A DNA stretch of 64,000 bases from Asterias rubens (Eukaryota). The number at the start of each line of letters is the position of its first letter. Within the stretch, counting starts at the first letter, position 1. Below the pieces are notes generated by a model. The model searched no databases. It was not told the origin of the DNA and worked only from the letters and a program-made list of their open reading frames with translations. This document shows positions 785-64,000 of this stretch, in pieces. The stretch lies in assembly GCF_902459465.1 (NCBI RefSeq), contig NW_022985740.1, forward strand, positions 1 through 64,000. Direction: 5' to 3'. The translations under genes and the position numbers were made by a program.

Positions 785-3365
785 ATGGACGTTCAGCGTG
801 GACATTGCTGACGTTGTAAGGTTCAACTGGAACAGACCATTCACTGTCCTGATTGCAAGATGGCGGAGTATTGTAGCTCAATATGTGAAGAAGGAGACAG
901 AGCTAGACATATGAGTAGAGAGTGCCCATTATTTGGAACAAGATCATGCAAGAAATGCAAAAAGAAGGGTACAATGAAAGATGTATGTCTGCTTTAATTT
1001 CCATCATTATCCCCTAATCATTTACAAAAAAGGCAATTTACATATAATGCTCTGTTGATTTTGTTGCAAAAGAGAGGAATCATTCTCTAAATGTATTGTA
1101 AAACGAAACTTGGCAAATTGTTTTACTATGTTTCTTACTTAAAGGCAGTGGACACTATTAGTAATTACTCAAAATAATTATTATCATAAAACCTCACTTG
1201 GTAATGAGTAATGGGGAGAGATATTGATAGTATAAAACATTGTGAGAAAGGGCTCCCTCTGAAGTGACAAAGTTTTCGAGAAAGACGTAATTTTCCATAA
1301 ATTTGATTTCGAGACCTCAAGTTTAGAATTTGAGGTCTCGAAATCAAGCATCTGAAAGCACACAACTTCGTCTGACAAGGGTTTTTTGTTTTTTCATAGT
1401 TACCTCGCAACTTTGACGACCAATTGAGCTTGAATGTTCACAGGTGTGTTATTTTATGTTAATGTTGAGATACACAAAGTGAGAAGACTGGTCTTTGACA
1501 ATTACCAATAGTGTCCACTGTTTTTAAGAAATGTTGTTGTCTCTTGCATGCATGTCATGTAAAAGCTAGAAGAGACTATAATCAGAGTTCTAGAGGTACA
1601 CTTGCACAAAAACTAGGAGGAGGATTCATAACGAAGAGATTTAAAATTACACATGGAAAAGTAACAAATTCTCCAACAGAGAGTTGATATATTTTATTCT
1701 GCTATAATGTCTTTTCAGTGTTCAGGTTGCAACCATGCATGGTACTGTAACAGTGAGTGTCAAACAAGTGATTGGGCCAATCATGAGGAGGAATGCAAGG
1801 AGAAAAAGGCAAGAACAAAAAGAGCAGCAGAAGATTTAATAGAAGAATACATTGGTATGCGTACTGACAGACTTGATGATTTCCCTTATTATTTTGGAAA
1901 CTGCATCGCCAAAGACTTCCTTCAACTTGATAACAATGAATGGTCTGATGGGTCAATATAGAAAACTGACTTGAACAGAGATTTTCATATTTTGTCAGCT
2001 GGTTGCGGAGACTTACGCAACACTGTTTTGACTATTGCTTCCCTTCCTGCCAAGTACCAGGGAAGTCTTTACATCACTCTCAATGACTTTGACCCTTTTG
2101 TCATGGCAAGGAATGTCTTATTTCTCTTTATGTTGGTTCGGTTTGCAGACACTGAGGGAATTGAGAGCAGTCTGACTACCATCTGGTACTCAGTTCACAT
2201 TGCTAAGAAAGAGTATGACTTGATCAAGACCAGCTTAGATGAGCTCATTCAGATGACCCCTCAAAGTCTCACAGAGGACTCTCAGATGACCCCTCAAAGT
2301 CTCACAGAGGTCACTCAAGGGTTGGTCAAAGTTAAAGATAAAGATCTTTCAGTTATGAGTCAAGTTTGGAACAAATGGAGATCACTAGAATGCCAACGAG
2401 GGGAACCATCCTCAATCAATCTCAGACAACAAAGACAAACTGTACTTGATGAATCAAAAAAAAAAATTGAACAAGAGCAGGGTAAGGGCAATCATTTAGA
2501 GTCATCCAGTGTTGAAAAGCAAATTGAAGAATGGTTTGACCATGGGATGTTCCTCCCCAAAGAAGAAAAACAAGAACTAATGTCATTTGATAATCCGACA
2601 CTAACAGGGCGTGAAGTTGATCACGATATCACTAAAAACCTGAGCCCAAAGGATCATGCCTTTGTGTACTGTGTCCAAGCAGTTTTACATCCCTTCAGAG
2701 TGTGGGATTGCTTGAGAGTGAGGAAGTTTGATACCAAACCCTACCCAACCCCTATGGAAATGTACCACAATTATATCACAAATCTCCTAAAGAAGGTAAA
2801 AAGTTTCATCCAGAATCGAAGACTTTTTATTCAAGTGTCACTGGCCAATTGTATGGACTTTCCTTCAGTACATAATGCTCTGAAGATGCCAAACTATGAT
2901 CGCATCTTCACATCCAATATTGCCGACTATGTTGGGCTTGCCAAGCTCCTGCAAGACTTCAAACCACTTCTTAATTCTAGTAATCACTACTCAGTACTTA
3001 TTACTGAGACAATGATCTGGGCACAATTTCTATTTAAATCATACTGCCTGCACACAGGCATGAATTATGATGACCTTAAGAAAAATTTGGGACTCCATAA
3101 CTGGATGGACTACTTAGATAATGCCCCTTACTTTGTTGGCTATCTGCGTGCACAAATCATGGCAGGGGGTCTTGGGATACTACCATTGACTAATGTGCCA
3201 TCATTTGAAGACGTGATGAAGTACAATGGTCTAGAAATGCGTGACTTTCGTAAGAAGCAGAATCGTCTTGTTCCATTTCAGTATCGAGTGAATAATCGTG
3301 ATTTGACCCTGATCAATGTAAATGACAGAGCAGTGGAGTGGTGTCTGCCACACACTGATGGCTAA
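785..3365 (+). pseudogene. Copy 1 (type A): double-MYND Zn finger + DUF4470-like gene, pseudogene
   Basis: Exons 785-982 (GAT|GT) and 1719-3365 (CAG|TGT), phase 0. TGG>TGA at 809-811 (W9*) and AAG>TAG at 1959-1961 relative to paralogs. In-frame 33-nt duplication near 2249-2310. Confidence 0.9.
1143..1523. mobile_element. MITE family A (Kolobok/piggyBac-like, TTAA target) in copy 1 intron
   Basis: TIR AGGCAGTGGACACTATT(A/G)GTAATT, TTAA on both sides, internal hairpin GATTTCGAGACCTCAA...TTGAGGTCTCGAAATC. Confidence 0.85.
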
Positions 3366-7610: not shown

Positions 7611-7649
7611 GTTCAATGAAGTGTGAGATTTAAGATCAATATAGCCTAA

Positions 7650-12608: not shown

Positions 12609-12976
12609 GCATCTTGTTCACCAAAAGCGTATAAGCATTTTACAATAATATTCATAAATACACGGGATAGTTTATCTATTCTGATTGGTCGAGAAAAAAT
12701 CACACGGGCATGTTGAAATGTGCAACAATGGTGGGAAGTGCATTTTAACAATGGATGGTATGCAAGAATTTGCAGGTGCTTATTTATGCTTCATGCAATC
12801 AATACAGATTGGTACTCTATTATTAGTAAGCGTTGAGCATCGCATTTAATTTGACCATTCTCAAAATGGTGCCCAATGATGTGACAGAAAATGAAAATGT
12901 ACACTCAGACTTCATGCTCCCCCTTATTATTTTGGAAACTGCATTGGTTTTTTTAAAAGCATTCTATAGGTGTTTT

Positions 12977-16535: not shown

Positions 16536-19500
16536 ATGGATGTTCAGCGTGGACATTGCTGGCGTTGTGAAGTTCAACTGGAACAGACCATTCACTGTCC
16601 TGATTGCAAGATGGCGGAGTATTGTAGCTCAACATGTGAACACAGAGACAGAGTTAGACATAGGAGTAGAGAGTGCCCGTTATTTGGAACAAGATCATGC
16701 AACAAATGCAATAAGAAGGGTACAATGAAACAGGTAGGATGTATGTTGGCTTCTCCATGTAGCCCTACTTGAAGGTAAAACCCACAAATCTTTTCGAAAA
16801 AGCCCATTCTTATATGTGGTTTCCCCACCATTGTGGTTTCCCCACCACTGGTCAGGGCAGAAACCACTAAAATCTGACATTTTGGGGGAAAAATACCACC
16901 TTTTTGGTAAAAATATGTCATAACCATGTCAATTCTCATCACACATATGCAAATTTGGTATCAAAATGATGAGAATTGCATGCTGAAATCAATTCTTTTG
17001 TCAAAAATAAATTTTCTGAAATGTAAGTCACTGTAATTTTTATTATGTTATCGTGACCTTTGACCCAGTTTTTAAAATAATGTATCATTCCAAAAATCAT
17101 TGAAATAAAATCACTTAATAGAGCATGTCTTCCTCTATCAGAATCCACTAAGAAACAGTTGGGCTCTTTAAAATTTACAACTTTATGACTATTTTTGTAC
17201 AAGTCACCATGATCTTTAATATGTTGTCGTGACCTTTGACCCAATTTTTGAAACAAAACACCATTCCAAAAATCAACAAAATAAAAATCACTTGATAGAG
17301 CATGTCTTCCTCTATCAGAATCAACCAAGAAACAACTTGGCTCTTCAAAATTTACAATTTTATGACTATTTTTGTACAGTTGTTAGGTTACAAATTAGTC
17401 AATTTATATACTTACATAATAAATCCACCAACAAAACTCACTCTTCTGTTTTTAAAGTTACTTAAAGTGTTCATGGTGTGATTTTTGTCTTGTTGATGGC
17501 TGATGTGGTTTAACCAGAACCAGAATTTAAATTATCAGCAGTGACGCACCCAGGATTTTTTATTTTGGGGGGTGGGCCATATTTTCCCCAAATATTTCTT
17601 TCGAAGATTGTAAAATCAAAAATCAAAACAAATCAAACAAACAAATTGAATACCTTGGAGGGCTGGGATCAATCCCCAAAAAGGTGGTATTTTACCCTAA
17701 AAATGTCAGATTTTAGTGGTTTCTGCCCTGACCACATGGTAAGTCCGATCGGGCTAAAAATTTGTGTGCATTCATTGCTCATTAGGACCTACAAGCACAG
17801 CAATTTTTATCCAAATCGGAAGACATGAGGTAAAAAAGTGTGTCGGTCTGACATGGAATGACCCATTTAGAAAAAAGTGTTACCTTCAGGCACTATCAGT
17901 ATCCCTATTTTACATCTTTTTGGTTCAAATCTAGGAATCACAAAAACATAATTTCCAAAATCAAGGTTTATATATTAAATCATTCATTCATTCTTTTCAG
18001 TGTGGAGGTTGCAACTACGCATGGTACTGTGACAAGGAATGTCAAAGAAGTGATCGGGCCAATCATAAGAAGTTATGCAAGAAGACAAAGGCAACTACAA
18101 CAACAGCAGCAGCTAAACTAACACAAAAACACATTTTGATGCGTACCGATAGACTTGGTGGTGCCCCTTATTATTTTGGAAACTGCATTGCTGAAGACTT
18201 CTTGCAACTTGCTAACAATGAATGGTCTGATGGGTCAATAAAGAAAACTGACTTGAACAGAGATTATCATATATTGTCAGCTGGTTGCGGAGACTTACGC
18301 AACACTGTCTTAACAGCAGCTTCCCTTCCTGCCAGGTACCAAGGAAGTCTTTACATCACTCTCAATGACTTTGACCCTTTTGTCATGGCAAGGAATGTCT
18401 TGTTTCTCTTTATGTTGGTTCGGTTTGCAGACACTGAGGGAATTGAGAGCAGTCTGACTACCATCTGGTACTCAGTTCACATTACAAAGAAAGAGTATGA
18501 CCTGATCAAGACCAGCTTGGATGAGCTCATTCAGATGACCCCTCAAAGCCTCCAAGAGGTCACTCAAGGGTTGGTCAAAGTTCAAGGTGGAGATCTTGCA
18601 GTCATGAGTCAAGTTTGGGACAAATGGAGATCACTAGAATGCCAACGAGGGAAACCATCCTCAATAAATCTCAGAAAACAAAGAAAAACTGCATTTGATC
18701 AATGTAATAAAGAAATTGGTAAGGGAAGGAAATTCATTCACACAAATTATTTAGAGTCATCCAGTGTTGAAAAGCAAATTGAAGAATGGTTTGACCATGG
18801 GATGTTCCTCCCCAAAGAAGAAAAACAAGAACTAATGTCATTTGATAACCCAACACTAACAGGGCGTGAAGCTGACATACCTCAGGGTTGTATAACTGAA
18901 ATGAAATTCTCAGTCACTCAAAATATAAGCCCAAAGGATTATGCCTTTGTGTACTGTATCAAAACATATTTACATCCCTTCAAAGTGTGGGATTGCTTGA
19001 GAGTGAGGGAGTCCGAGACCAGACCCTGCTCATCCCCTATGGTGATGTACCACAACTACATCACAAAACTCCTCCAGAAATTCAAACATCTCATCCAGCA
19101 ACAACGGCTTTCTTTCCAAATTTCTCTGGCTAACTGTATGGACTTTCCTTCGATTCATAAGTCTCTTAAAATGTCAAACTATGACAGGATATTCACATCC
19201 AATCTCAGTGACTACATCGGCTTTGCCAAGCTCCTGCAAAACTTCAAACCCCTTCTTAACCAAAGTAACCGCTCCTCAGTAATTGTTACTGAGACGATAA
19301 ACTGGATTGAATTTTTCCCTAGCGACACATCTGACAAAGTTGAACTAATTGCTGAATCATACTTAAAGGACACAGGCAGGAATCCTGCCACCCTTCTTGC
19401 AAACCTAACTGACGTAGCACCGCCTACCTGGTTAGAGTACTTCGACAATGCCCCTTACTTCATTGCATATCTGCGTGCACAAATCATGGCAGGGGGTCTT

Positions 19501-19701
19501 GGGATACCACCATTGACTTATTTGCCATCATTTGGTGAAGTGATGAAGTACAATGGTCTAGAAATGCGTGACTTTCGTAAGAAGCTGAATCGTCTTGTCC
19601 CATTTCAGTATCGAACCAATGCTCGTGACTTGACCAGAATAAATGCAACTGACAGAGCAGTAGAGTGGTATCTGCCACATCATCTCATCATCATCATCTA
19701 G
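16536..19701 (+). CDS. Copy 2 (type B): tandem MYND Zn-finger / DUF4470-like putative SAM-binding protein, 632 aa
   Basis: Exons 16536-16733 and 18001-19701, phase-0 GT-AG intron, no stops. Motifs CxxC..CxxC..YCxxxC..HxxxC, ILSAGCGDLRN, LNDFDPFVMARN, DRIFTSNLSDY. The last codons come from the LINE tail. Confidence 0.85.
16853..17730. mobile_element. Non-autonomous DNA transposon in copy 2 intron
   Basis: ~55-bp TIR beginning CAGGGCAGAAACCACTAAAATCTGACATTT. Flanking direct repeat ACCAC(A)TGGT. Internal ~176-bp tandem duplication (units begin 17053 and 17229). Confidence 0.75.
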
Positions 19702-24928: not shown

Positions 24929-27900
24929 ATGGACGTTCAGCGTGGACATTGCTGGCGTTGTGAAGTTCAACTGGAACAGACCATTCACTGTCCTGATTGC
25001 AAGATGGCGGAGTATTGTAGCTCAACATGTGAACACAGAGACAGAGTTAGACATAGGAGTAGAGAGTGTCCGTTATTTGGAACAAGATCATGCAACAAAT
25101 GCAATAAGAAGGGTACAATGAAAGAGGTATGTTGTGAATTTGGAAAGTTCAAGACAAGATTCTCACATATTGTCATGAATGCTGAATATAAGTCAAGCTC
25201 AATTCCTTACATCATAAAACTTAATGTGATGAATTGGGGACTATGGGCCACTAGGTGGCAGCAGACATACCAGAGTCTAATAATTTACATTGTTAAAACA
25301 CTGGGTAGATTTTTGCTGTTTATACACAGAGAGCAAGTTCTAGTGCGCACATTTAGCCGACTACTGACCAGAAACGACCATGCGCAGTGATGCACTCACT
25401 CGAAAGACTCGTTTGGAACCTTAGTCAACCATCGGTACCACTGTATTCAACACTCCATTGCCTTCTGTGTTTTCGCTATAGTACCACTGGTTCCCTTCTG
25501 CCCTTTACACATATTAGTATGGAACAGGCTGTTGGGACCAAGGAAGAAACCATGGGCATGAGGCTGGTTCCAAAAATGGTCTACCACAGCAGTCAACCAA
25601 TGGTCGACCAGCCTGGTTTTAGTAAAAAAAAGTCAATCTTTAGTTAACCTTGGTGCACAATCGAACTTGCTCATAGCCTTGGTAGAACGCCAGTATTCTC
25701 AAAACTACAACTAACACCCTCAGAATAAAGGCAACAAATGTTATAAAACATTTTTTCATTGGTTTACCTCATTGAAACTGAATCTTCGTTCACGTTCCTT
25801 GAATATCATACTTGCAGACTGTCTGGTTGAACAAATCTTTAAAATGTTTTGAGCACACTTTATTTTCATAAATAAAGTGAGAATTGGAGGGTTTTAAGAC
25901 ATCTATCAAAAACGTCTATTTTTATGACTCTTTTTTTAATTTAAGAAGTGTATCAAACATTCTCTATATCCTATCTAATGCGCTGCGTTCTTGACGTAGT
26001 GGCACTATACAAATGCCCTATATGTATGTTTGTATGTATGAATCTGTGTGTAAATTAATATTATGTGCATCTAATTCATGTGCATGCTAAAAAATATGCA
26101 CAACAATGCGAAAAAAGGGCACAGTCTAGAAGAATGTTTCAAAAACTTTTCAAGCACCAAGAAAAGATTTGTTTGAAGGATCGTTTTTGTCAAACCTTAT
26201 ACTTTGATAGCTTTGAAATACTGCATTGAAACTTCTTTTTTACAGTGGGGAGGTTGCAACAATACATGGTGCTATTGTTTAATGTTTTCTCTGGTTTTGA
26301 TAAATAACAATTGTGATTTTTTATTGGAAAAAAATGAATACACTAACCACTTCAAAATACTATCTATTTCTTTCAGTGTGCAGGTTGCAACATAGCATGG
26401 TACTGTAACAGAGAGTGTCAAAGTAGTGATTGGGTCAACCATAAAGCTTTTTGCATCAAGGCCAAGGAAGACATCAAATCAACAGCAGCTCAAATTGGAC
26501 TATTAAACTTCAGAATGCAAAAAGACAGACAGGGTGGTTCCCCTTATTATTTGGGAAACACTATTGCCAAAGACTTCTTGCAACTTGATAACAATGAATG
26601 GTCTGATGGGTCAATAAAGAAAACTGACTTGAACAGGGACTATCATATATTGTCAGCTGGTTGCGGAGACTTACGCAATACTGTCTTGACAGCAGCTTCC
26701 CTCCCTGCCAGGTACCAGGGAAGTCTTTACATCACTCTCAATGACTTTGACCCTTTTGTCATGGCAAGGAATGTCTTGTTTCTCTTTATGTTGGTTCGGT
26801 TTGCAGACACTGAGGGAATTGAGAGCAGTCTGACTACCATCTGGTACTCAGTTCACATTACAAAGAAAGAGTATGACTTGATCAAGACCAGCTTGGATGA
26901 GCTCATTCAGATGACCCCTCAAAGTCTCACAGAGGTCACTCAAGGGTTGGTCAAAGTTCAAGGTAAAGATCTTGCAGTCATGAGTCAAGTTTGGGACAAA
27001 TGGAGATCACTAGAATGCCAACGAAAGATACAATCCTCAATAAATCTCAGAAAACAAAGACAAACTGCATTTGAGAAATTTAGACAAAAGCATGGGGATA
27101 GTGTGAAGTATTGCTATACCAATCCTTCACAGTCACCTGCTGTTAAAAAGCAAACTGAAGAATGGTTTGACCATGGTTTGTTCCTCCCCAAAGAGACGAA
27201 ACAAGGGACAATGTCATTTGATAACCCAACACTAACCGGACGTGGAGCTTCAACGGATCCAGGTTTTGACATGGTGATTTTGAAAAATCAAAATGCAAGC
27301 CCAAAGGATTATGCCTTTGATTACTGTGTCAGACCAGATTCACATCCCTTCAGAGTGTGGGATTGCTTGAGAGTGAGGGAGTCTGAGACCAGACCCTACG
27401 CAACCCCTATGGTGATGTACCACAACTACATCACAAACCTGATACAGAAAGTCAAACATCTAATTCAGCAGAGAAGACTTTATATGCAAGTTTCTCTGGC
27501 CAACTCTATGGATTTTCCTTCAATTCACAAGTCTCTTAAGATGTCCAACTATGACCGCATCTTCACATCCAATCTTGCTGACTATATTGGTTTTGGGAAG
27601 CTTTTACAAACATTTAAACCCCTTCTAAACCAAAGTAACTGCTCCTCAGTAATTGTTACTGAAACAATAAACTGGGCTGAATTTCTACCTCAGGCTGTCT
27701 GTAAACCTGAGCACAAAGAATACAAAAGATGTATTGTAGCATATTGTCTGGATACAGGCAGAGATTTAAAAAATCTACTACGTAAATTTGATATTGGACT
27801 TCATACCTGGATGGACTACTTTGATAGTTCCGCTTACTTTCTTGCATATCTGCGTGCACAAATTATGGGCGGGGGTTTCGGGGTACCACCATTGACTAAA

Positions 27901-28071
27901 GTGCCTTCATTTGGCGAAGTGATGAAGTACAATGGTCTAGAAATGCGTGACTTTCGTAAGAAGCTGAATCGTCTTGTACCATTTCAGTATCGAGTCAATG
28001 CTCGTGATTTGAACGTTATAACTGCAACTGACAGAGCAGTGGAGTGGTGTCTGCCACACACTGATGGCTAA
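24929..28071 (+). CDS. Copy 3 (type C): tandem MYND / DUF4470-like protein, 630 aa
   Basis: Exons 24929-25126 and 26377-28071, phase 0, open throughout. Confidence 0.87.
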
Positions 28072-32811: not shown

Positions 32812-35403
32812 ATGGACGTTCAGCGTGGACATTGCTGGCGTTGTAAAGTTAAACTGGAACAGACCATTCACTGTCCTGATTGCAAGATGGCGGAGTATTG
32901 TAGCTCAACATGTGAAAACAGAGACAGAGTTAGACATAGGAGTAGAGAGTGCCCGTTATTTGGAACAAGATCATGCAACAAATGCAACAAGAAGGGTACA
33001 ATGAAAGAGGTATGTCTGCTTTAATTTCCATCATTATCCCCTAATCATTTACAAAAAAGGCAATTTACATATAATGCTCTGATGATTTTGTTGCAAAAGA
33101 GAGGAATCATTCTCTAAATGTATTGTAAAACGAAACTTGGCAAATTGTTTTACTATGTTTCTTACTTAAAGGCAGTGGACACTATTAGTAATTACTCAAA
33201 ATAATTATTATCATAAAACCCCACTTGGTAATGAGTAATGGGGAGAGATATTGATAGTATAAAACATTGTGAGAAAGGGCTCCCTCTGAAGTGACAAAGT
33301 TTTCGAGAAAGACGTAATTTTCCATAAATTTGATTTCGAGACCTCAAGTTTAGAATTTGAGGTCTCGAAATCAAGCATCTGAAAGCACACAACTTCGTCT
33401 GACAAGGATTTTTGTTTTTTCATAGTTACCTCGCAACTTTGATGACCAATTGAGCTTGAATGTTCACAGGTGTGTTATTTTATGTTAATGTTGAGATACA
33501 CAAAGTGAGAAGACTGGTCTTTGACAATTACCAATAGTGTCCACTGTTTTTAAGAAATGTTGTTGTCTCTTGCATGCATGTCATGTAAAAGCTAGAAGAG
33601 ACTATAATCAGAGTTCTAGAGGTACACTTGCACAAAAACTAGGAGGAGGATTCATAACGAAGAGATTTAAAATTACACATGGAGAAGTAACAAATTCTCT
33701 AACAGAGAGTTGATATATTTTATTCTGCTATAATGTCTTTTCAGTGTGCAGGTTGCAACTATGCATGGTACTGTAACCAGGAATGTCAAAGAAGTGATTG
33801 GGCCAATCATATGAAGGAATGCAAGGAGAAAAAGGCAAGAACAAAAAGAGCAGCAGATGAATTAAGAAAAGAATACATTTCAATGCGTACTGACAGACTT
33901 AATGATTTCCCTTATTATTTTGGAAACTGCATTGCTAAAGACTTCTTGCAACTTGATAACAATGAATGGTCTGATGGGTCAATAAAGAAAACTGACTTGA
34001 ACAAAGATTATCATATATTGTCAGCTGGTTGCGGAGACTTACGCAATACTGTCTTGACAGCAGCTTCCCTTCCTGCCAGGTACCAGGGAAGTCTGTACAT
34101 CACTCTCAATGACTTTGACCCTTTTGTCATGGCAAGGAATGTCTTGTTTCTCTTTATGTTGGTTCGGTTTGCAGACACTGAGGGAATTGAGAGCAGTCTG
34201 ACTACCATCTGGTACTCAGTTCACATTACAAAGAAAGAGTATGACCTGATCAAGACCAGCTTGGATGAGCTCATTCAGATGACCCCTCAAAGTCTCACAG
34301 AGGTCACTCAAGGGTTGGTCAAAGTTCAAGGTAAAGATCTTGCAGTTATGAGTCAAGTTTGGAACAAATGGAGATCACTAGAATGCCAACGAGGGGAACC
34401 ATCCTCAATCAATCTCAGAAAACAAAGAAAAACTGTACTTGATGAATCCCAAAAAAAATATGAACAAAAGTGTGGTAAGGGCAATAAATTCCGTTATACA
34501 AATCCTTTAGAGTCACCCAGTGCTAAAAAGCAATTTGAAGAATGGTTTGACCATGGGATGTTCCTCCCCAAAGAAGAAAAACAAGAAACAATGTAATTTG
34601 ATAATCCGACACTAACAGGGCGTGAAGTTGATCTCCATTCCACTAAAAAGCCGAGCCCAAAGGATCATGCCTTTGTGTACTGTGTCCAAGCAGTTTTACA
34701 TCCCTTCAGAGTATGGGATTGCTTGAGAGTGAGGGAGTCTGAGAGGGAGTCTGAGAGGGAGTCTGAGACCAGACCCTACCCAACCCCTATGGTGATGTAC
34801 CACAACTACATCACAAAATTCCTCAAGACGGTAAAAAGCTTCATCCAGAATGGAAGACTTTTTATTCAAGTGTCACTAGCCAATTGTATGAACTTTCTTT
34901 CAGAACATATTTCTCTAAAGATGCCAAACTATGATCGCATCTTCACATCCAATATTGCCGACTATGTTGGGTTTGCCAAGCTCCTGCAAGACTTCAAACC
35001 ACTTCTTAATTCTAGTAATCACTACTCAGTACTTATTACTGAGACAATGATCTGGGCAGAAATTCTATCTAAACTGGAGAACACAGACTATAAACCTTGC
35101 ATTACATCATACTGCCGTGAAAATGGTGACATCCATAACTGGATGGAATACTTTGATAATGCCCCTCACTTTGTTGGCTATCTGCGTGCACAAATCATGG
35201 CAGGGGGTCCTGGGGTACAGTCATTGACTAATGTGCCATCGTTTGGTGAAGTGATGAAACACAATGGTCTACAAATGCGTAACTTTCGTAGGAAGCTGAA
35301 TCGTCTTGTTCCATTTCAGTATCGAGTGAATAATCGTGATTTGACCCTGATCAATTTAAATGACAGAGCAGTGGAGTGGTGTCTGCCACACACTGATGGC
35401 TAA
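32812..35403 (+). pseudogene. Copy 4 (type A): one premature stop (would give 349 aa)
   Basis: Exons 32812-33009 and 33745-35403. TCA>TAA at 34594-34596; the frame is otherwise intact. Triplicated 12-nt unit at 34731-34766. Confidence 0.85.
33170..33549. mobile_element. MITE family A in copy 4 intron
   Basis: Same site and orientation as the copy at 1143. Confidence 0.85.
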
Positions 35404-39429: not shown

Positions 39430-42400
39430 ATGGATGTTCAGCGAGGACATTGCTGGCGCTGTGAAGTTTCACTGGAACAGACCATTCACTGTCCTGATTG
39501 CAAGATGGCGGAGTATTGTAGCTCAACATGTGAACACAGAGACAGAGTTAGACATAGGAGTAGAGAGTGCCCGTTATTTAGAACAAGATCATGCAACAAA
39601 TGCAAAAATAAGGGTACAATGAAAGAGGTATATCTGCTTTTATTTCAATCATTATCCCCTATTCATTTTAAAGCCATTATACACTTTCGGTACAGGGGGG
39701 GAAAAAAAGTTTTACAAATAGGGTTTACAGAAGGTAATGGTGAAAGACTTCTCTTGAAATATTGTTTCATAAAATGCTTTACTTTTTGAGAAAACATTAA
39801 AACAATATATATTCTAGATAGCGAGAATTACGAATTTATTATAAACACATGTCATGACACGACGTAACGCGCGAAAACAGAAGTGTGTTTTCCCGTTATT
39901 TTCTCCCAACTCCGATGACTGATTGAGCCTAATTTTTAACAGGTTTGTTATTTTATAAATAAGTTGTGATACACGAAGTGTGGGACTTGGACAATACTGT
40001 ATACCGAAAGTGTATAATGGCTTTAAAAAGAAAATTTACATAATGCTCTGTTGATTTTGTTGCAAAAGAGGGGAATAATTCAAACAAAACTTGGCAAATT
40101 ATTTTCCTCTATTATGTTGCTTAAGGCCCTGTCATTCCTTGACGTAAACAAATTTCTCTAAAACGTTGGCATACGCTGACCTATCGATAGATTTTTCAAT
40201 TTTGAGAGCGTATACAAAGCGTATTCATAACGAGTTCGACGTATGCATACCGTATTAGTAACTTACATAAAACGTTTCCAAAACGAATGCTTAGCGTGTT
40301 GCCGGCGTTCACAACTTATGTCCTACGATAGTGTAACTACTGCATAGCGCGCAACAGCGTATTGCCGACGATCATATGTATTAGCCTACAAAGTGGGTGT
40401 CTCTCTGCTGTGAACCCAGTTTGTATTTACCGATTCACATAAACGCTCCCAATACGCCATAATACGGAAGCTGTAAGTTAGAAACACGTTCAGTAAGTTC
40501 TGTGGTTGTCCGAAATACGTCAAATACGTTCGACATAGGTTAAAAGGACGTTACAGATGGGTTAGAAATACGTTTTAGGTACGCTAGACATTATCTCGAC
40601 GTATGTCAACTTATGATTAACTTACAAGTAACGTGTGTGAACGTGTGGCAACAATCTTATAACTTACCTACAACTTATGCGGAACTTCTGAGCCACACGC
40701 TGGCATATGTCGAAAATTTGTGTGCATGCACAACATTTCTCGACGCATGCCTTACTTCGATGTATATCAGCGTGTTTCAGCTTGCTCTTAACTTATACAA
40801 AACTTACCCATAAATTATTCGACGTACGCCAGCGTAATTGCCTAAATTTTCATACGTCGGCATACGCTGGCTTAAGCGTCAAGGTGTGACAGGGCCTTTA
40901 CTTTAAATTATGTCTATTGCATGCATGGCATGTAAAAGTCGCATCCCCTTAAGCTGATTCCCTGGCTGCCGCTTCCCATGTTGTATCGTAATTTGGGTGT
41001 GATCCCTGGCTACACGGCAGTTAACGGTTGTATGGCTTCTGACTGGCACCCCCGAACAAAGATATTGACAAAATAGGGACACCGCCAACATAGGGCTAGA
41101 TAGCTCAGTTGGTAGAGTGCCGGCACGTTAGTCCGGAGATCGTTGGTTCGAACACACTCTTCAATTCTTTGTTCAACCCCAAAAATCATATTTCATTTTG
41201 CTATTATTATTTTTCAGTGTGCACGTTGCAACTACGCATGGTACTGTAACCAGGAATGTCAAAGAAGTGATTGGGCCAATCATAAGGAGTTATGCAAGAA
41301 GACAAAGGCAACTACAACAACAGCAGCTGATAAACTAACACAAAAACACATTTTTATGCGTACCGATAGACTTGGTGGTGCCCCTTATTATTTTGGAAAC
41401 TGCATTGCTGAAGACTTCTTGCAACTTGCTAACAATGAATGGTCTGATGGGTCAATAAAGAAAACTGACTTGAACAGAGATTATCATATATTGTCAGCTG
41501 GTTGCGGAGACTTACGCAACACTGTCTTGACAGCAGCTTCCCTTCCTGCCAGGTACCAGGGAAGTCTGTACATCACTCTCAATGACTTTGACCCTTTTGT
41601 CATGGCAAGGAATGTCTTGTTTCTCTTTATGTTGGTTCGGTTTGCAGACACTGAGGGAATTGAGAGCAGTCTGACTACCATCTGGTACTCAGTTCACATT
41701 ACAAAGAAAGAGTATGACTTGATCAAGACCAGCTTGGATGAGCTCATTCAGATGACCCCTCAAAGTCTCACAGAGGTCACTCAAGGGTTGGTCAAAGTTC
41801 AAGGTGAAGATCTTGCAGACATGAGTCAAGTTTGGGACAAATGGAGATCACTAGAATGCCAACGAAAGAAACAATCCTCAATAAATCTCAGAAAACAAAG
41901 AAAAACTGTGTTTGATCAATATAATAAAGAAATTGAACAAAACATTGGTAAGGGAAGGGAATTCGTTCACACAAATCAGTTAGAGTCATCCAGTGCTGAA
42001 AAGCAATTTGAAGAATGGTTTGACCATGGGATGTTCCTCCCCAAAGAAGAAAAACAAGAACTAATGTCATTTGATAACCCGACACTAACAGGGCGTGAAG
42101 CTGACATACCTTTTGGTTGTATAACTGAAATTAAATTCTCAATCAATCAAAATATAAGCCCAAAGGATTATACCTTTGTGTACTGCATCAAACAAGATTC
42201 ACATCCCTTCAAAGTGTGGGATTGCTTGAGAGTGAGGGAGTCTGAGACCAGACCCTGCTCATCCCCGATGGTGATTTACCACAACTACATCACAAACCTC
42301 CTCCAGAAATTCAAACATCTCATCCAGCAACAACGGCTTTCTTTCCAAATTTCTCTGGCTAACTGTATGGACTTTCCTTCGATTCATAAGTCTCTTAAAA

Positions 42401-42957
42401 TGTCAAACTATGACAGGATATTCACATCCAATCTCAGTGACTACATCGGCTTTGCCAAGCTCCTGCAAAACTTCAAACCCCTTCTTAACCAAAGTAACCG
42501 CTCCTCAGTAATTGTTACTGAGACGATAAACTGGATTGAATTTTTGCCTAGCGACACATCTGACAATTTTAAACTAAGTGCTGAATCATACTTAAAGGAT
42601 ACAGACAGGAATCCTGCCACCCTTCTTGCAAACCTAACTGACGTAGCACCGACTACCTGGTTAGAGTACTTCGACAATGCCCCTTACTTCATTGCATATC
42701 TGCGTGCACAAATCATGGCAGGGGGTCTTGGGATACCACCATTGACTTATTTGCCATCATTTGGTGAAGTGATGAAGTACAATGGTCTAGAAATGCGTGA
42801 CTTTCGTAAGAAGCTGAATCGTCTTGTTCCATTTCAATATCGAGTCAATGCTCGTGACTTGACCAGAATAACTGCAACTGACAGAGCAGTGGAGTGGTAT
42901 CTGCCACATAATGAGCACTTGGGCCCCGGTCCCACTGGACCCAGCCTTGATCTCTAA
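39430..42957 (+). CDS. Copy 5 (type B): tandem MYND / DUF4470-like protein, 645 aa
   Basis: Exons 39430-39627 and 41218-42957, phase 0, open. The C-terminal GPGPTGPSLDL* is read from an inserted element. Confidence 0.85.
39672..40022. mobile_element. MITE family B variant in copy 5 intron
   Basis: Both TIRs carry the same variant AGCCATTATACACTTTCGGTA; TTAA flanks. Confidence 0.85.
40124..40897. mobile_element. PIF/Harbinger-like non-autonomous element (774 bp)
   Basis: TIR AGGCCCTGTCA(TT/CA)CCTTGACG. Exact TTA TSD at 40121-40123 and 40898-40900. CpG-rich interior. Confidence 0.85.
40952..41187 (+). mobile_element. tRNA-derived SINE-like repeat with 5' leader
   Basis: tRNA-like segment 41093-41164 (loop AC-GTT-AG). 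The leader matches the minus-strand copy at 14335-14478. Ends ~30 nt before the copy-5 acceptor. Confidence 0.75.
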
Positions 42958-47822: not shown

Positions 47823-50800
47823 ATGGATGTTCAGCGTGGACATTGCTGGCGTTGTGAAGTTCAACTGGAACAGACCATTCACTGCCCTGATTGCAAGATG
47901 GCGGAGTATTGTAGCTCAATATGTGAACACAGAGACAGAGTTAGACATAGGAGTAGAGAGTGCCCGTTATTTGGAACAAGATCATGCAACACATGCAATA
48001 AGAAGGGTACAATGAAAGAGGTATGTTGTGAATTTGGAAAGTTCAAGACAAGATTCTCACATATTGTCATGAATGCTGAATATAAGTCAAGCTCAATTCC
48101 TTACATCATAAAACTTAATGTGATGAATTGGGGACTATGGGCCACTAGGTGGCAGCAGACATACCAGAGTCTAATAATTTACATTGTTAAAACACTGGGT
48201 AGATTTTTGCTGTTTATACACAGAGAGCAAGTTCTAGTGCAGACATTTAGCCGACTACTGACCAGAAACGAACATGCGCAGTGACGCACTCACTCGAAAG
48301 ACTCGTTTGGAACCTTAGTCAACCATCGGTACCACTGTATTCAACACTCCATTGCCTTCTGTGTTTTCGCTATAGTACCACTGGTTCCCTTCTGCCCTTT
48401 ACACATATTAGTATGGAACAGGCTGTTGGGACCAAGGAAGAAACCATGGGCATGAGGCTGGTTCCAAAAATGGTCTACCACAGCAGTCAACCAATGGTCG
48501 ACCAGCCTGGTTTTAGTAAAAAAAAGTCAATCTTTAGTTAACCTTGGTGCACAATCGAACTTGCTCATAGCCTTGGTAGAACGCCAGTATTCTCAAAACT
48601 ACAACTAACACCCTCAGAATAAAGGGAACAAAAGTTATAAACATTTTTTCATTGGTTTACCTCATTGAAACTGAATCTTCGTTCACGTTCCTTGAATATC
48701 ATACTTGCAGACTGTCTGGTTGAACAAATCTTTAAAATGTTTTGAGCACACTTTATTTTCATAAATAAAGTGAGAATTGGAGGGTTTTAAGACATCTATC
48801 AAAAACGTCTATTTTGATGACTCTTTTTTTAATTTAAGAAGTGTATCAAACATTCTCTATATCCTATCTAATGCGCTGCTTTCTTGACGTAGTGGCACTA
48901 TACAAATGCCCTATATGTATGTTTGTATGTATGACTCTGTGTGTAAATTAATATTATGTGCATCTAATTCATGTGCATGCTAAAAAATATGCACAACAAT
49001 GCGAAAAAAGGGCACAGTCTAGAAGAATGTTTCAAAAACTTTTCAAGCACCAAGAAAAGATTTGTTTGAAGGATCGTTTTTGTCAAACCTTATACTTTGA
49101 TAGCTTTGAAATACTGCATTGAAACTTCTTTTTTACAGTGGGGAGGTTGCAACATTACATGGTGCTATTGTTTAATGTTTTCTCTGGTTTTGATAAATAA
49201 CAATTGTGATTTTTTATTGGAAAAAAATGAATACACTAACCACTTCAAAATACTATCTATTTCTTTCAGTGTGGAGGTTGCAACATAGCATGGTACTGTA
49301 ACAGAGAGTGTCAAAGTAGTGATTGGGTCAACCATAAAGCTTTTTGCATCAAGGCCAAGGAAGACATCAAATCAACAGCAGCTCAAATTGGACTATTAAA
49401 CTTCAGAATGCAAAAAGAGGGTGGTTCCCCTTATTATTTGGGAAACACTATTGCCAAAGACTTCTTGCAACTCTCTAACAATGAGTGGTCTGATGGGTCA
49501 ATAAAGAAAACTGACTTGAATAAAGATTATCATATATTGTCAGCCGGTTGCGGAGACTTACGCAACACTGTCTTGACAGCAGCTTCCCTTCCTGCCAGGT
49601 ACCAAGGAAGTCTTTACATCACTCTCAATGACTTTGACCCTTTTGTCATGGCAAGGAATGTCTTGTTTCTCTTTATGTTGGTTCGGTTTGCAGACACTGA
49701 GGGAATTGAGAGCAGTCTGACTACCATCTGGTACTCAGTTCACATTACAAAGAAAGAGTATGACCTGATCAAGACCAGCTTGGATGAGCTCATTCAGATG
49801 ACCCCTCAAAGTCTCACAGAGGTCACTCAAGGGTTGGTCAAAGTTCAAGGTAAAGATCTTGCAGACATGAGTCAAGTTTGGGACAAATGGAGATCACTAG
49901 AATGCCAACGAAAGATACAATCCTCAATAAATCTCAGAAAACAAAGACAAACTGCATTTGAGAAATTTAAACAAAAGCATGGGGATAATGTGAGGTATTG
50001 TTATACCAATCCTTTACAGTCACCTGCTGTTAAAAAGCAAACTGAAGAATGGTTTGACCATGGTTTGTTCCTCCCCAAAGAGACGAAACAAGGGACAATG
50101 TCATTTGATAACCCAACACTAACGGGACGTGGAGCTTCAGCAGCTCCAGGTTATGAAACGCTAGTTAGGGATTGGAATGCACCAAAGGCAAGCCCAAAAG
50201 ATTTTGCCTTTGAGTACTGCATCAGACCAGATTCACATCCTTTCAAAGTGTGGGATTGCTTGAGAGTGAGGGAGTCCGAGACCAGACCCTACCCAACCCC
50301 TATGGTGATGTATCACAACTACATCACAAACCTGATACAGAAAGTCAAACATCTAATTCAGCAGAGAAGACTTTATATCCAAGTTTCTCTGGCCAATTCT
50401 ATGGACTTTCCTTCAATTCATAAGTCTCTTAAGATGTCCAACTATGACCGCATCTTCACATCCAATCTTGCTGACTATATTGGTTTTGGGAAGCTTCTAC
50501 AAACATTTAAACCCCTTCTAAACCAAAGTAACTGCTCCTCAGTAATTGTTACTGAAATAATAAACTGGATTGCATTTCTACCTCAGGCTCTCTGTAAACC
50601 TGAGCACAAAGAATATCAAAGATGTATTGTAGCATATTGTCTGGATACTGGCAGAGATTTAAAAAATCTTATGCGTAAATTTGATATTGGACTCCATACC
50701 TGGATGGACTACTATGATAGTTCCCCTTACTTTCTTGCATATCTGCGTGCACAAATTATGGGCGGGGGTTTCGGGGTACCACCATTGACTAAAGTGCCTT

Positions 50801-50964
50801 CATTTGGTGAAGTGATGAAGTACAATGGTCTAGAAATGCGTGACTTTCGTAAGAAGCTGAATCGTCTTGTTCCATTTCAGTATCGAGTCAATGCTCGTGA
50901 TTTGAACATTATAACTGCAACTGACAGAGCAGTGGAGTGGTATCTACCACACACTGATGGCTAA
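47823..50964 (+). CDS. Copy 6 (type C): tandem MYND / DUF4470-like protein, 630 aa
   Basis: Exons 47823-48020 and 49270-50964, phase 0, open. Confidence 0.87.
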
Positions 50965-53625: not shown

Positions 53626-56156
53626 ATGGACGTTCAGTGTGGACATTGCTGGCGTTGTGAAGTTCAACTGGAACAGACCATTCAATGCCCCGATTGCAAG
53701 ATGGCAGAGTATTGTAGCACAACATGTGAACACAGAGACAGAGTTAGACATAGGAGTAGAGAGTGCCCGTTATTTGGAACAAGATCATGCAACAAATGCA
53801 AAAAGAAGGGTACAATGAAAGAGGTATGTCTGCTTTAATTTCCATCATTATCCCCTAATCATTTACAAAAAAGGCAATTTACATATAATGCTCTGTTGAT
53901 TTTGTTGCAAAAGAGAGGAATCATTCTCTAAATGTATTGTAAAACGAAACTTGGCAAACTGTTTTACTATGTTTCTTACTAAAGGCAGTGGACACTATTA
54001 GTAATTACTCAAAATAATTATTATCATAAAACCTCACTTGGTAATGAGTAATGGGGAGAGATGTTGATAGTATAAAACATTGTGAGAAAGGGCTCCCTCT
54101 GAAGTGACAAAGTTTTTGAGAAAGACGTAATTTTCCATAAATTTGATTTCGAGACCTCAAGTTTAGAATTTGAGGTCTCGAAATCAAGCATCTGAAAGCA
54201 CACAACTTCGTCTGACAAGGGTTTTTTGTTTTTTCATAGTTATCTCGCAACTTTGACGACCAATTGAGCTTGAATGTTCACAGGTGTGTTATTTTATGTT
54301 AATGTTAAGATACAAAAAGTGAGAAGACTGGTCTTTGACAATTACCAATAGTGTCCACTGTTTTTAAGAAATGTTGTTGTCTCTTGCACAAAAACTAGGA
54401 GGAGGATTCATAACAAAGAGATTTAAAATTACACATGGAAAAGTAACAAATTCTCTAACAAAGAGTTGATATATTTTATTCTGCTATAATGTCTTTTCAG
54501 TGTGCACGTTGCAACTATGCATGGTACTGTAACAGAGAGTGTCAAACAAGTGATTGGGCCAATCATAAGGCGGAATGCAAGGAGACAAAGGCAACAAATA
54601 AAAAATTAGCAGCTCTTTTAAGAGAAGAATACACTTCAATGCGTACTGACAGACTTGATAATTTCCCTTATTATTTTGGAAACTGCATTGCTAAAGACTT
54701 CTTGCAACTTGCTAACAATGAATGGTCTGATGGGTCAATAAAGGAAACTGACAGGGATTTTCATATATTGTCAGCTGGTTGCGGAGACTTACGCAACACT
54801 GTCTTGACAGCAGCTTCCCTCCCTGCCAGGTACCAGGGAAGTCTTTACATCACTCTCAATGACTTTGACCCTTTTGTCATGGCAAGGAATGTCTTGTTTC
54901 TCTTTATGTTGGTTCGGTTTGCAGACACTGAGGGAATTGAGAGCAGTCTGACTACCATCTGGTACTCAGTTCACATTACAAAGAAAGAGTATGACTTGAT
55001 CAAGACCAGCTTGGATGAGCTCATTCAGATGACCCCTGAAGGTCTCCAAGAGGTCACTCAAGGGTTGGTCAAAGTTCAAGGTGAAGATCTTGCAGTCATG
55101 AGTCAAGTTTGGGACGAATGGAGATCACTTGAATGCCAACGAGGGAAACGATCCTCAATCAATCTCAGAAAACAAAGACAAACTGTACTTGATAAATCGA
55201 AAAAAGAAATTGAACAAGAGCATGGTAAGGGCCAAGTATTACGTTATACAAATCATTTAGAGTCATCCAGTGCTGAAAAGCAATTTGAAGAATGGTTTGA
55301 CCATGGGATGTTCCTCCCCAAAAAAGAAAAACAAGAACTAATGTCATATGATAATCCGACACTAACAGGGCGTGAAGCTGATCTCCCAATCACTAAAAAG
55401 CAGAGCCCAAAGGATTATGCCTTTGTGTACTGTATCAGCACGTTTTTCCATCCCTTCAGAGTGTGGGATTGCTTGAGAGTGAGGGAGTCTGAGACCAGAC
55501 CCTACCCAACCCCTATGGAAATGTACCACAATTATATCACAAAACTACTAAAGAAGGTAAAAAGTTTCATCCAGAATGGAAGACTTTTTATTCAAGTCTC
55601 ACTGGCCAATTGTATGGACTTTCCTTCAGTACATAATGCTCTGAAGATGCCAAACTATGATCGTATCTTCACATCCAATATTGCCGACTATGTTGGGTTT
55701 GCCAAGCTCCTGCAAGACTTCAAACCACTTCTTAATTCTAGTAATCACTACTCAGTACTTATTACTGAGACAATGAACTGGGCAGATTTTATACATGAAC
55801 CTAAGGACACAACAGACTATAAACCTTGCATGAAATCATACTGCCTGGATACAGACCGGGATTATAATGACCTTAACACTGGACCTTTCATCTGGATGGA
55901 ATACTTTGATAATTCCCCTATCTTTCTTGCATATCTGCGTGCACAAATCATGGCAGGGGGTGTTGGGGTGCAGCCATTGACTTATTTGCCATCATTTGGT
56001 GAAGTGATGAAGTACAATGGCCTAGAAATGCGTGACTTTCGTAAGAAGCTGAATCGTCTTGTCCCATTTCATCATCGAGTGAATAATCGTGATTTGACCC
56101 TGATCAATGTAACAGACAGAGCAGTGGAGTGGTGTCTGCCACATTCTGATGGCTAA
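53626..56156 (+). CDS. Copy 7 (type A): tandem MYND / DUF4470-like protein, 617 aa
   Basis: Exons 53626-53823 and 54501-56156, phase 0, open. The only intact type-A copy. Confidence 0.88.
53983..54363. mobile_element. MITE family A in copy 7 intron
   Basis: Same site as the copies at 1143 and 33170; left flank CTAA. Confidence 0.85.
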
Positions 56157-62817: not shown

Positions 62818-64000
62818 ATGCGTTTTATTTACACAAAGTGTTAACCCATATACAAGCAATCATTCGTTTATTCTTTCCAGTGTGGAGGCTGCAACAACGC
62901 ATGGTACTGTAACAAGGATTGCCAGAGAAGTGATTGGGCAAATCATAAGTCGTCATGCGACAAAACAAAGGCAGCTATAGTGACAGTTGCAGCTCAATTA
63001 AGGGAGTTATATTGTACAATGCAAACGGACACACTTGGTGGTTCCCCTTATTATTTTGGAAACACTATTGCCGAAGACTTCCTTCAACTTGACAATAATG
63101 AATGGTCTGATGGGTCCATGAAGAAAACTGACTTGAACAGGGATTATCATATTTTGTCAGCTGGTTGCGGAGACTTACGCAACACTGTCTTGACAGCAGC
63201 TTCCCTTCCTGCCAGGTACCAGGGAAGTCTTTACATCACTCTCAATGACTTTGACCCTTTTGTCATGGCAAGGAATGTCTTGTTTCTCTTTATGTTGGTT
63301 CGGTTTGCAGACACTGAGGGAATTGAGAGCAGTCTGACTACCATCTGGTACTCAGTTCACATTACAAAGAAAGAGTATGACCTGATCAAGACCAGCTTGG
63401 ATGAGCTCATTCAGATGACCCCTCAAAGTCTCACAGAGGTCACTCAAGGGTTGGTCAAAGTTCAAGGTAAAGATCTTGCAGACATGAGTCAAGTTTGGGA
63501 CAAATGGAGATCACTAGAATGCCAACGAAAGAAACAATCCTCAATTAATCTCAGAAAACAAAGACAAACTGCGTTTGAGAAATTTAAACAGCAGCATGGG
63601 GAGGGCGTTAAGCATTGCTATACAAATCTTTCACAGTCACCTGCTAGTAAAAAGCAAACTGAAAAATGGTTTGACCATGGGTTATTCCTCCCCAAAGAGA
63701 CAAAACATATAGCAGTGACATTTGATAACCCAACCCTAACAGGACGTAAAGCTGTAGCAGCTCCTGGTTACGATGTTGTACCTGTACCGTGGGCTGGCCC
63801 CAAAAAGCCAAAGGATTATGCCTTTGAGTACTGCATCAGACCAGATTCACATCCTTTCATAGTGTGGGATTGCTTGAGAGTGAGGGAGTCCGAGACCAGA
63901 CCCTACCCAACCCCCTATGGTGATGTATCACAACTACATCACAAAACTCCTCAAGAAGGTAAAAAGCTTCATCCAGAATGGAAGACTTTTTATTCAAGTG

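What the first reader, a model, noticed from the sequence alone, without database searches (positions are those of the whole stretch)
18355..18501. Core of the putative catalytic domain is nucleotide-identical across divergent paralogs
Seen: ~147 nt (ITLNDFDPFVMARN...HITKKEYD) appears identical by eye, including third codon positions, in copies 2-8. The surrounding ~90-aa block is almost invariant, yet the introns of types A, B and C cannot be aligned by eye and nearby exon segments are highly divergent. Purifying selection alone would not freeze synonymous sites, so this points to repeated gene conversion or crossover confined to the core (inference).
Basis: partly seen in the sequence, partly recalled or inferred. 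Interest (0 to 1): 0.75.

Follow-up and report, generated by a model that had tools for sequence, protein, structure and literature searches.

The report
Gene-conversion hotspot in starfish paralogs
Eight neighbouring copies of a starfish gene of unknown function share a 150-letter stretch that is identical letter for letter because the copies keep overwriting this piece of one another (gene conversion); the effect is real and well supported, but it is a well-known way for gene families to evolve.

Summary
The window is an unplaced 86-kb scaffold of Asterias rubens. It carries eight tandem two-exon genes encoding two MYND fingers plus a DNAAF3-like DUF4470 domain. Copies 2-8 are identical over 150 nt (18352-18501 in copy 2). 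Between-group synonymous divergence (pS) is 0.35-0.65 over most of the exon and 0 in the core. Of the aa-invariant degenerate codons, 0 of 46 vary in the core, against 65 of 189 outside the low-divergence zone.

The interpretation, gene conversion, is supported by four results:
- Six Patiria miniata paralogs show the same dip (pS 0.05-0.12), but with their own synonymous codons. Asterias-Patiria core pS is 0.45-0.50.
- In Acanthaster one tandem pair has core pS 0.00. The other has 0.44-0.71 and is homogenised elsewhere.
- The divergent paralog Rch1 differs from its A. amurensis ortholog by 21 clustered changes. Nineteen of them match the array.
- Segment trees are incongruent.

Homogenisation is not confined to the core. 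A graded ~540-nt zone, exon 1 and two further tracts are also affected.

Polishing may have sharpened near-identity into perfect identity, and I could not fully exclude that.

Two earlier notes on this same window (s1-150192, s1-151466) reached a compatible patchwork reading. The scan holds nothing like it on other DNA.

This is a new member of a known kind.

The parts
18352..18501 (+). Copy 2: run invariant in copies 2-8 (150 nt). It contains the reported 147-nt core 18355-18501, which encodes strand beta2, the ARN helix and the next helix of the DUF4470 domain.
2073..2219 (+). Copy 1 core, 3 mismatches (copy 1 is a pseudogene)
26731..26877 (+). Copy 3 core, identical
34099..34245 (+). Copy 4 core, identical (copy 4 carries a premature stop at 34594-34596)
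41572..41718 (+). Copy 5 core, identical
49618..49764 (+). Copy 6 core, identical
54849..54995 (+). Copy 7 core, identical
63235..63381 (+). Copy 8 core, identical (copy 8 is a pseudogene: 13-nt deletion in exon 1 and a +1 insertion near 63911)
18166..18705 (+). Copy 2: graded low-divergence zone around the core (between-group pS 0-0.2). It is bounded on both sides by indel-rich hypervariable segments.
18001..19701 (+). Copy 2 exon 2 (second half of MYND 2, linker, DUF4470/DNAAF3-like domain)
1719..3365 (+). Copy 1 exon 2, in-frame stop at 1959-1961 and a 33-nt duplication
26377..28071 (+). Copy 3 exon 2 (product 100% identical to A. rubens LOC117306597)
33745..35403 (+). Copy 4 exon 2, nonsense codon at 34594-34596 and a 24-nt in-frame insertion
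41218..42957 (+). Copy 5 exon 2
49270..50964 (+). Copy 6 exon 2
54501..56156 (+). Copy 7 exon 2
62881..64000 (+). Copy 8 exon 2, cut by the end of the window
16536..16733 (+). Copy 2 exon 1 (198 nt: MYND 1 and the first half of MYND 2). The other copies lie at 785-982, 24929-25126, 32812-33009, 39430-39627, 47823-48020, 53626-53823 and 61945-62129. Copies 2-7 differ by only 1.5-6.6%, and sister pairs are no closer than non-sisters.
18975..19050 (+). Copy 2: second low-pS tract (codon columns about 325-350, pS 0.11-0.17)
19575..19680 (+). Copy 2: third low-pS tract near the 3' end (codon columns about 525-560, pS about 0.10)

Best explanation
The identical core is the centre of a hotspot of interlocus (ectopic) gene conversion among tandem paralogs of a MYND + DNAAF3-like gene family in Asterias rubens. 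The likely mechanism, which is inferred, is homologous-recombination repair that copies short patches of about 150-600 nt from one paralog to another. Conversion needs a stretch of near-identity. The part of the protein under the strongest amino-acid constraint (strand beta2, the ARN helix and the following helix of the DUF4470 domain) keeps enough identity to be used again and again, so homogenisation there reinforces itself. The indel-rich loop-coding segments on either side stop the heteroduplex and diverge. The same process, with other tract positions, acts on exon 1, on two more conserved tracts, and in other starfish.
For: (1) Between-group pS is 0.35-0.65 over most of exon 2, 0.1-0.2 in columns 55-115, 0 in the core and 0.02-0.1 up to column 235. 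A control block with equally low pN (0.06-0.10) has pS 0.5-0.68.
(2) Inside the zone the sister pairs 2/5, 3/6 and 4/7, which are 94-97% identical including introns, are no closer than non-sisters. Site 18502 differs within all three sister pairs.
(3) Six Patiria miniata paralogs have pS 0.5-0.8 elsewhere but 0.05-0.12 in the same core. Asterias-Patiria core pS is 0.45-0.50. Eight of 42 same-amino-acid codons carry an Asterias codon that no Patiria copy has.
(4) In Acanthaster, the tandem pair Ap3/Ap4 has core pS 0.00. Pair Ap1/Ap2 has core pS 0.44-0.71 but 0.06 at columns 360-390 and 0-0.07 at columns 540-575. Comparisons of Acanthaster with the other species give 0.56-0.72. The core can therefore drift, and the tract position depends on the pair.
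(5) Rch1, about 60% identical in protein to the window copies, has a core with 0 mismatches. Against its A. amurensis ortholog Am1 it has 21 differences clustered at 18309-18502. At 19 of these Rch1 matches the array majority. There are 0 differences in the 156 nt before the cluster and 1 in the 231 nt after it. This is a patch with orthologous sequence on both sides.
(6) Segment trees are incongruent (AU p from 1e-7 to 9e-4). The zone tree is about 5-7 times shallower than the trees of its two neighbouring segments. A Sawyer-type permutation test gives 30 of 153 pairs with p below 1/2000, many of them spanning the core.
(7) Copies with disabling lesions (4 and 8) still carry the identical core.
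(8) GC3 is raised in the homogenised tracts: Asterias core 0.53 against 0.29-0.41 in the variable and 5' segments; Patiria core 0.64 and second tract 0.73. This fits GC-biased conversion.
Against: Perfect identity in seven copies of one unplaced scaffold is more extreme than in the A. rubens chromosomal array (0-5 mismatches) or in A. amurensis (1-6 mismatches), so polishing may have removed a few singletons. The read test was only partial.

Asterias-Patiria core pS (0.45-0.50) is somewhat lower than in the flanks (0.65-0.85). Some synonymous constraint or codon bias is therefore not excluded.

The Sawyer-type test assumes equal rates along the gene. The AU groups were chosen after I had seen the distance matrices. 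GC3 is confounded with amino-acid composition. No conversion event was observed directly, and the claim that the hotspot is self-reinforcing is an inference.
Confidence: 0.85

Rival explanations
1. Constraint at the nucleotide level: the core holds an element that works as DNA or RNA (a structured RNA, a small-RNA target that co-regulates the family, or a splicing or translation-speed signal), and selection removes synonymous changes.
For: Asterias-Patiria pS in the core (0.45-0.50) is lower than in the flanks (0.65-0.85). A shared identical 150-mer would allow one small RNA to target all copies (speculation).
Against: Eight of 42 same-amino-acid codons differ synonymously between Asterias and every Patiria copy. 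The Acanthaster pair Ap1/Ap2 has core pS 0.44-0.71, and Acanthaster against the other species gives 0.56-0.72. The RNA fold has z = +0.94, no better than shuffles, and Rfam gives no credible match. Copies with disabling lesions keep the identical core.
Confidence: 0.04
2. Assembly artefact: short reads that map to several paralogs caused polishing to overwrite copy-specific bases, so near-identity became perfect identity on this unplaced scaffold.
For: The window lies on an 86-kb unplaced scaffold. Its seven copies show 0 differences, whereas the chromosomal copies and the A. amurensis copies show 1-6. If conversion had stopped at about the age of the species split, I would expect a few synonymous singletons (my estimate).
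Against: The same assembly keeps 3 differences in copy 1 and 1-5 in four of the five chromosomal copies. The dip is present in three other assemblies from different projects: A. amurensis, Patiria and Acanthaster. In the laid reads, the 40 best-supported variant letters in four runs include the flanking variable sites 26703 and 26878 but none inside 26731-26877. Raw RNA reads of a relative match from 26734 and up to 26913 and turn unalignable beyond those points. An artefact could only sharpen an existing near-identity.
Confidence: 0.08
3. Recent duplication of whole genes followed by very fast divergence of the flanks under positive or relaxed selection, with the core simply not yet diverged.
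For: pN is high in the variable segments (0.3-0.46), close to pS there.
Against: Synonymous sites and introns of the flanks are also strongly diverged (pS 0.35-0.65; introns unalignable between groups). The truly recent duplicates (sister pairs) are not the closest pairs inside the zone. The divergent paralog Rch1 has an identical core.
Confidence: 0.03

Closest known systems
Interlocus gene conversion giving mosaic divergence in tandem paralogs (for example the three Arabidopsis halleri HMA4 copies, bioRxiv 10.1101/2025.10.29.685298; Caenorhabditis paralogs, PMC3966223; Drosophila duplicates, PMC2588116, known to me by title and abstract only)
   Same: Tandem copies in one orientation. Effective conversion varies within the gene. 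Conserved parts are homogenised and others diverge. The process depends on sequence identity.
   Different: Here the array is older and larger: at least 13 copies seen in A. rubens. The flanks are near synonymous saturation. The homogenised patch lies inside one exon and ignores exon-intron borders. The same domain is homogenised independently in starfish orders that separated long ago.
DNAAF3 (dynein axonemal assembly factor 3; DUF4470 + DUF4471)
   Same: The Pfam DUF4470 match is above the curated cut-off. Foldseek aligns residues 116-630 of the model to DNAAF3 of ten species, with E from 1e-11 to 2e-6 and TM 0.30-0.58.
   Different: These proteins carry two N-terminal MYND fingers, are only 11-14% identical to DNAAF3, and form large tandem families in echinoderms. 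DNAAF3 itself is, to my knowledge, a single-copy ciliary gene. Their function is unknown.
Sea urchin Sp185/333 (SpTransformer) mosaic gene family (from my own knowledge, not checked here)
   Same: An echinoderm tandem family whose members are mosaics of shared sequence blocks reassorted by recombination.
   Different: The protein is unrelated. No immune role or expression pattern is known for the starfish family. Here the blocks are a folded domain plus loops, not element patterns.

Membership tests
Concerted evolution by interlocus gene conversion | Within the tract, paralogs of one species are more alike than they are to copies in other species, with species-specific synonymous states | tested here: met
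   Within-species core pS is 0 in Asterias and 0.05-0.12 in Patiria, against 0.45-0.50 between them. Eight of 42 codons carry fixed synonymous differences.
Concerted evolution by interlocus gene conversion | Synonymous divergence drops locally relative to flanks under similar protein constraint | tested here: met
   0 of 46 codons vary in the core against 19 of 35 in the control block. pS is 0 against 0.5-0.68.
Concerted evolution by interlocus gene conversion | A non-reciprocal patch: the converted tract has unconverted, orthologous sequence on both sides | tested here: met
   Rch1 against Am1: 21 clustered differences at 18309-18502, 19 of them towards the array majority, with 0 and 1 differences in the adjoining 156 and 231 nt. 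Which of the two lineages was converted is inferred by parsimony.
Concerted evolution by interlocus gene conversion | Trees of the tract and of its flanks disagree | tested here: met
   AU tests reject clades carried over from other segments (p from 1e-7 to 9e-4). For the zone itself one of three tests gives p = 0.03, because the zone holds few variable sites.
Concerted evolution by interlocus gene conversion | GC-biased substitution in the tracts | tested here: inconclusive
   GC3 is higher in the homogenised tracts of both Asterias and Patiria, but amino-acid composition was not controlled and no substitution spectrum was polarised.
DUF4470 / DNAAF3-like proteins | Match to Pfam PF14737 above its gathering score | tested here: met
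   68.5 and 68.8 bits against a cut-off of 25.
DUF4470 / DNAAF3-like proteins | Whole-domain fold similarity to DNAAF3, including the DUF4471 part | tested here: inconclusive
   Foldseek gives E = 1e-11 and TM 0.43-0.58 over residues 116-630, but Pfam DUF4471 was not matched at E <= 0.01. Both structures are predictions.
   The model has strand 155-160 followed by a loop containing G-C-G-D, and strand 183-188 followed by the invariant D189. PDB matches to methyltransferases are weak (E 0.05-0.3, TM 0.2-0.3). Cofactor binding was not tested.

The most novel reading that the evidence does not exclude
The homogenised tracts (exon 1, the core zone, the tract near column 340 and the 3' end) serve as fixed recombination anchors. 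Between them, a small number of deep 'types' of loop-coding segments are reassorted among genes. The array would then work as a germline cassette-shuffling system that produces combinatorial diversity in an echinoderm-specific family of MYND + DNAAF3-like proteins, and selection would maintain that diversity.
Probability: 0.12. Interest if true: 0.6.

Novelty: new member of a known kind. Interest (0 to 1): 0.35.

Why it matters
This is a clean, multi-species example of gene conversion acting on a sub-exonic patch for a very long time while the rest of the gene reaches synonymous saturation. That makes it useful as a test case for models of identity-dependent conversion and GC-biased conversion.

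It is also a practical warning. Trees, dN/dS values and orthology calls for this large, uncharacterised echinoderm family will be wrong unless the genes are split into segments.

It does not reveal a new mechanism.

Tried and rejected
- Embedded structured RNA: folding 18340-18520 gave z = +0.94, and Rfam gave only a sub-threshold snoRNA-like match outside the core. Rejected.
- Read-level test of polishing: only Logan contigs and one raw RNA run of a relative were available, and 148 lesser variants were not listed, so the test is partial.
- Look-up of P0003 found no contig.
- A paper search for the A. rubens assembly and polishing pipeline found no genome note for this species. What I say about polishing is general reasoning.
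- The full-text search for DUF4470 gave only DNAAF3 and ciliary papers, and nothing on this family.
- A. rubens versus A. amurensis cannot separate constraint from conversion. The species differ by only about 1-2% in orthologous exon segments, so I used Patiria and Acanthaster instead.
- The N run between Rch3 and Rch4 in L004 was left as it is, and the sequences were cut there.

Full report
**What is there**

The window carries eight tandem copies, all on the + strand, of a two-exon gene.
- Exon 1 is 198 nt. It encodes a first MYND finger and half of a second.
- An intron of 0.7-1.6 kb follows.
- Exon 2 is about 1.7 kb. It encodes the rest of MYND 2, a linker and a large domain that matches Pfam DUF4470 at 68 bits against a cut-off of 25.

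The product of copy 3 is 100% identical to Asterias rubens LOC117306597, which lies on an 86-kb unplaced scaffold.

Three copies carry disabling lesions:
- Copy 1 has stop codons in both exons.
- Copy 4 has a nonsense codon at 34594-34596.
- Copy 8 has a 13-nt deletion in exon 1 and a +1 insertion near 63911.

BLAST of the window against itself shows a three-gene segmental duplication. Copies 2/5, 3/6 and 4/7 (with copy 1) are 94-97% identical, non-coding DNA included. Between these groups, homology begins within about 10 nt of the exon 2 acceptor and ends at the stop codon.

**The observation**

The 147-nt stretch is identical in copies 2-8, and copy 1 has 3 mismatches. The fully invariant run is 150 nt (18352-18501). 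Shuffling the variable columns 10,000 times gave a mean longest run of 19 and a maximum of 53.

A Nei-Gojobori sliding window gave these values for between-group synonymous divergence, pS:

| Exon 2 region (codon columns) | Between-group pS |
|---|---|
| Most of the exon | 0.35-0.65 |
| 55-115 | 0.1-0.2 |
| Core, 118-167 | 0 |
| 167-235 | 0.02-0.1 |
| Just beyond 235 | 0.4-0.5 |

An internal control block (columns 385-434) has equally low pN (0.06-0.10) but pS of 0.5-0.68. Protein-level constraint therefore does not lower pS by itself. Among amino-acid-invariant degenerate codons, 0 of 46 vary in the core, 65 of 189 vary outside the zone and 19 of 35 vary in the control block.

Further dips lie at columns 325-350 and 525-560. 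Exon 1 differs by only 1.5-6.6% among copies 2-7.

**Constraint or exchange?**

A. amurensis is too close to decide. Orthologous exon segments differ by only about 1-2%. Its seven copies carry cores with 1-6 mismatches to the A. rubens core.

Two more distant starfish decide it.

- **Patiria miniata.** Six paralogs have pS of 0.5-0.8 over most of the exon but 0.05-0.12 in the same core. Asterias-Patiria pS in the core is 0.45-0.50. In 8 of 42 codons with the same amino acid, no Patiria copy has the Asterias codon. Patiria also has a second homogenised tract (columns 344-368) where Asterias has pS of 0.33-0.55.
- **Acanthaster planci.** The tandem pair Ap3/Ap4 has core pS of 0.00. The pair Ap1/Ap2 has core pS of 0.44-0.71, yet 0.06 at columns 360-390 and 0-0.07 at columns 540-575. 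Comparisons between the two loci, and between Acanthaster and the other species, give 0.56-0.9 in the core.

The core can therefore accumulate synonymous changes freely. It is frozen only among particular neighbouring copies, and the frozen tract sits in different places in different pairs. That is the signature of gene conversion, not of a sequence element. In line with this, the RNA fold is no better than shuffles (z = +0.94) and Rfam finds nothing credible.

**Direct traces of exchange**

- **A conversion patch in Rch1.** Rch1 sits on A. rubens chromosome LR699102.1 and is about 60% identical in protein to the window copies. Its nucleotides differ from them by 44-48%, about 20% and 14-19% in the segments next to the core. 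Yet its core has 0 mismatches. Against its A. amurensis ortholog Am1 it shows 21 differences clustered at 18309-18502. At 19 of them Rch1 carries the array majority base. There are no differences in the preceding 156 nt and one in the following 231 nt. This is a patch of at least 194 nt with orthologous sequence on both sides. It is a conversion rather than a crossover, and it arose after the two species split. Which lineage was converted is a parsimony inference.
- **Sister pairs lose their kinship inside the zone.** Within-pair pS there equals or exceeds between-group pS. The identical tract around the core is only 150-159 nt for the three sister pairs but up to 310 nt for non-sisters. Site 18502 differs within all three sister pairs.
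- **Segment trees disagree.** AU tests give p from 1e-7 to 9e-4. The caveat is that I chose the tested groups after seeing the distance matrices. For example, copy 8 is the ortholog of Am2/Am4 in the 5' segment (3% apart), 29% from them in the next variable segment, and 2.7% from Rch5 and Am3 further on.
- **A Sawyer-type permutation test** gives 30 of 153 pairs with p below 1/2000. Many of these fragments span the core and others lie elsewhere. The test assumes equal rates along the gene.
- **GC3 is raised in the homogenised tracts** of both genera. This fits GC-biased conversion but is not controlled for amino-acid composition.

**Could it be an assembly artefact?**

Partly, at most. Seven copies with no difference at all is more extreme than the chromosomal array (0-5 mismatches) or A. 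amurensis (1-6 mismatches). Polishing with multi-mapping short reads could erase singletons.

Several results argue against a major role.
- The same assembly keeps 3 differences in copy 1 and 1-5 in four of the five chromosomal copies.
- The dip recurs in three other assemblies from different projects.
- In four runs laid on copy 3, the 40 best-supported alternative letters include the flanking variable sites 26703 and 26878 but none inside 26731-26877.
- Raw RNA reads of a relative match from 26734 and up to 26913 and become unalignable beyond those points. This reproduces the mosaic edges without any assembly.

The read test is incomplete, because 148 lesser variants were not listed and the DNA runs were held only as contigs.

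**What the domain is**

An AlphaFold model built on 39 homologs has pLDDT 87 and pTM 0.90. Foldseek aligns residues 116-630 to DNAAF3 of ten species, with E from 1e-11 to 2e-6 and TM of 0.30-0.58. Solved class I methyltransferases match only weakly, with E of 0.05-0.3.

The core encodes strand 183-188, the invariant D189, the helix with the invariant A196-R197-N198 and the next helix with W222 and S224. These are the most conserved residues of the whole family. The variable segments map to low-confidence loops at residues about 110-150, 300-320 and 359-368. 'Catalytic' remains a guess.

**Mechanism**

- **Shown:** local loss of synonymous divergence, species- and pair-specific tracts, a patch-like event and mosaic trees.
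- **Inferred:** conversion by recombination repair among neighbouring copies, and dependence on identity. The most constrained protein segment keeps the substrate alike and is homogenised repeatedly, while the indel-rich loop segments end the tracts.

This matches published accounts of identity-dependent interlocus conversion and mosaic divergence in tandem paralogs (10.1101/2025.10.29.685298; PMC3966223).

**Verdict**

The finding is real and well explained. It is a new example of a known process in an undescribed family. Two earlier notes on this same window (s1-150192, s1-151466) reached a compatible 'patchwork' reading, and a word search of the scan found nothing like it on other DNA.

Noticed in passing
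window 785-982, 16536-16733, 24929-25126, 32812-33009, 39430-39627, 47823-48020, 53626-53823, 61945-62129: Exon 1 (MYND 1 plus half of MYND 2) is also homogenised. Copies 2-7 differ by 1.5-6.6%, and copies 2 and 3 (different groups) differ by 1.5%, less than the sisters 2/5 (4.0%) and 3/6 (2.5%). The introns on either side cannot be aligned between groups.
   Followed up: partly
window 2220, 18502, 26878, 34246, 41719, 49765, 54996, 63382: The first variable site after the core alternates strictly along the array: T in copies 1, 3, 5 and 7, and C in copies 2, 4, 6 and 8. This cuts across the three-gene duplication unit, so all three sister pairs differ at this site.
   Followed up: partly
window 809-811, 1959-1961, 34594-34596, near 62100 and near 63911: Single disabling lesions in otherwise open reading frames: copy 1 (two stops), copy 4 (one stop) and copy 8 (a 13-nt deletion and a +1 insertion). 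Either the copies are young pseudogenes or these are assembly errors.
   Followed up: partly
window 19698-21155 (- strand) and 19801-20631 (+ strand): Long open reading frames (485 and 276 aa) lie directly after copy 2, where its 3' end departs from the other copies. This may be a mobile-element insertion that replaced the normal stop region.
   Followed up: no
window 12948-13447: An internal tandem repeat with a period of about 69 nt and 90-95% identity between copies lies in the 16-kb gap between copies 1 and 2.
   Followed up: no
L004:16332-17784 (A. rubens LR699102.1): An assembly gap (a run of N) lies between two family copies (Rch3 and Rch4). One open frame reads across it, and the NCBI model LOC117296567 with several isoforms spans this region, so it may merge two genes.
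   Followed up: no
window 26600-27060: In the same-sample DNA run, the summed contig depth over the core zone (about 5500-8900) is some 40-60 times that of single-copy pieces (about 100-140). This suggests many more family members with a similar core elsewhere in the genome. The tool warns that this depth is not a copy number.
   Followed up: no
L005 and L006 (Patiria), L007 (Acanthaster), alignment columns about 344-390: A second tract, coding for the segment after the P-M-V-M-Y-H motif, is homogenised in Patiria and in the Acanthaster pair Ap1/Ap2 but not in Asterias.
   Followed up: partly
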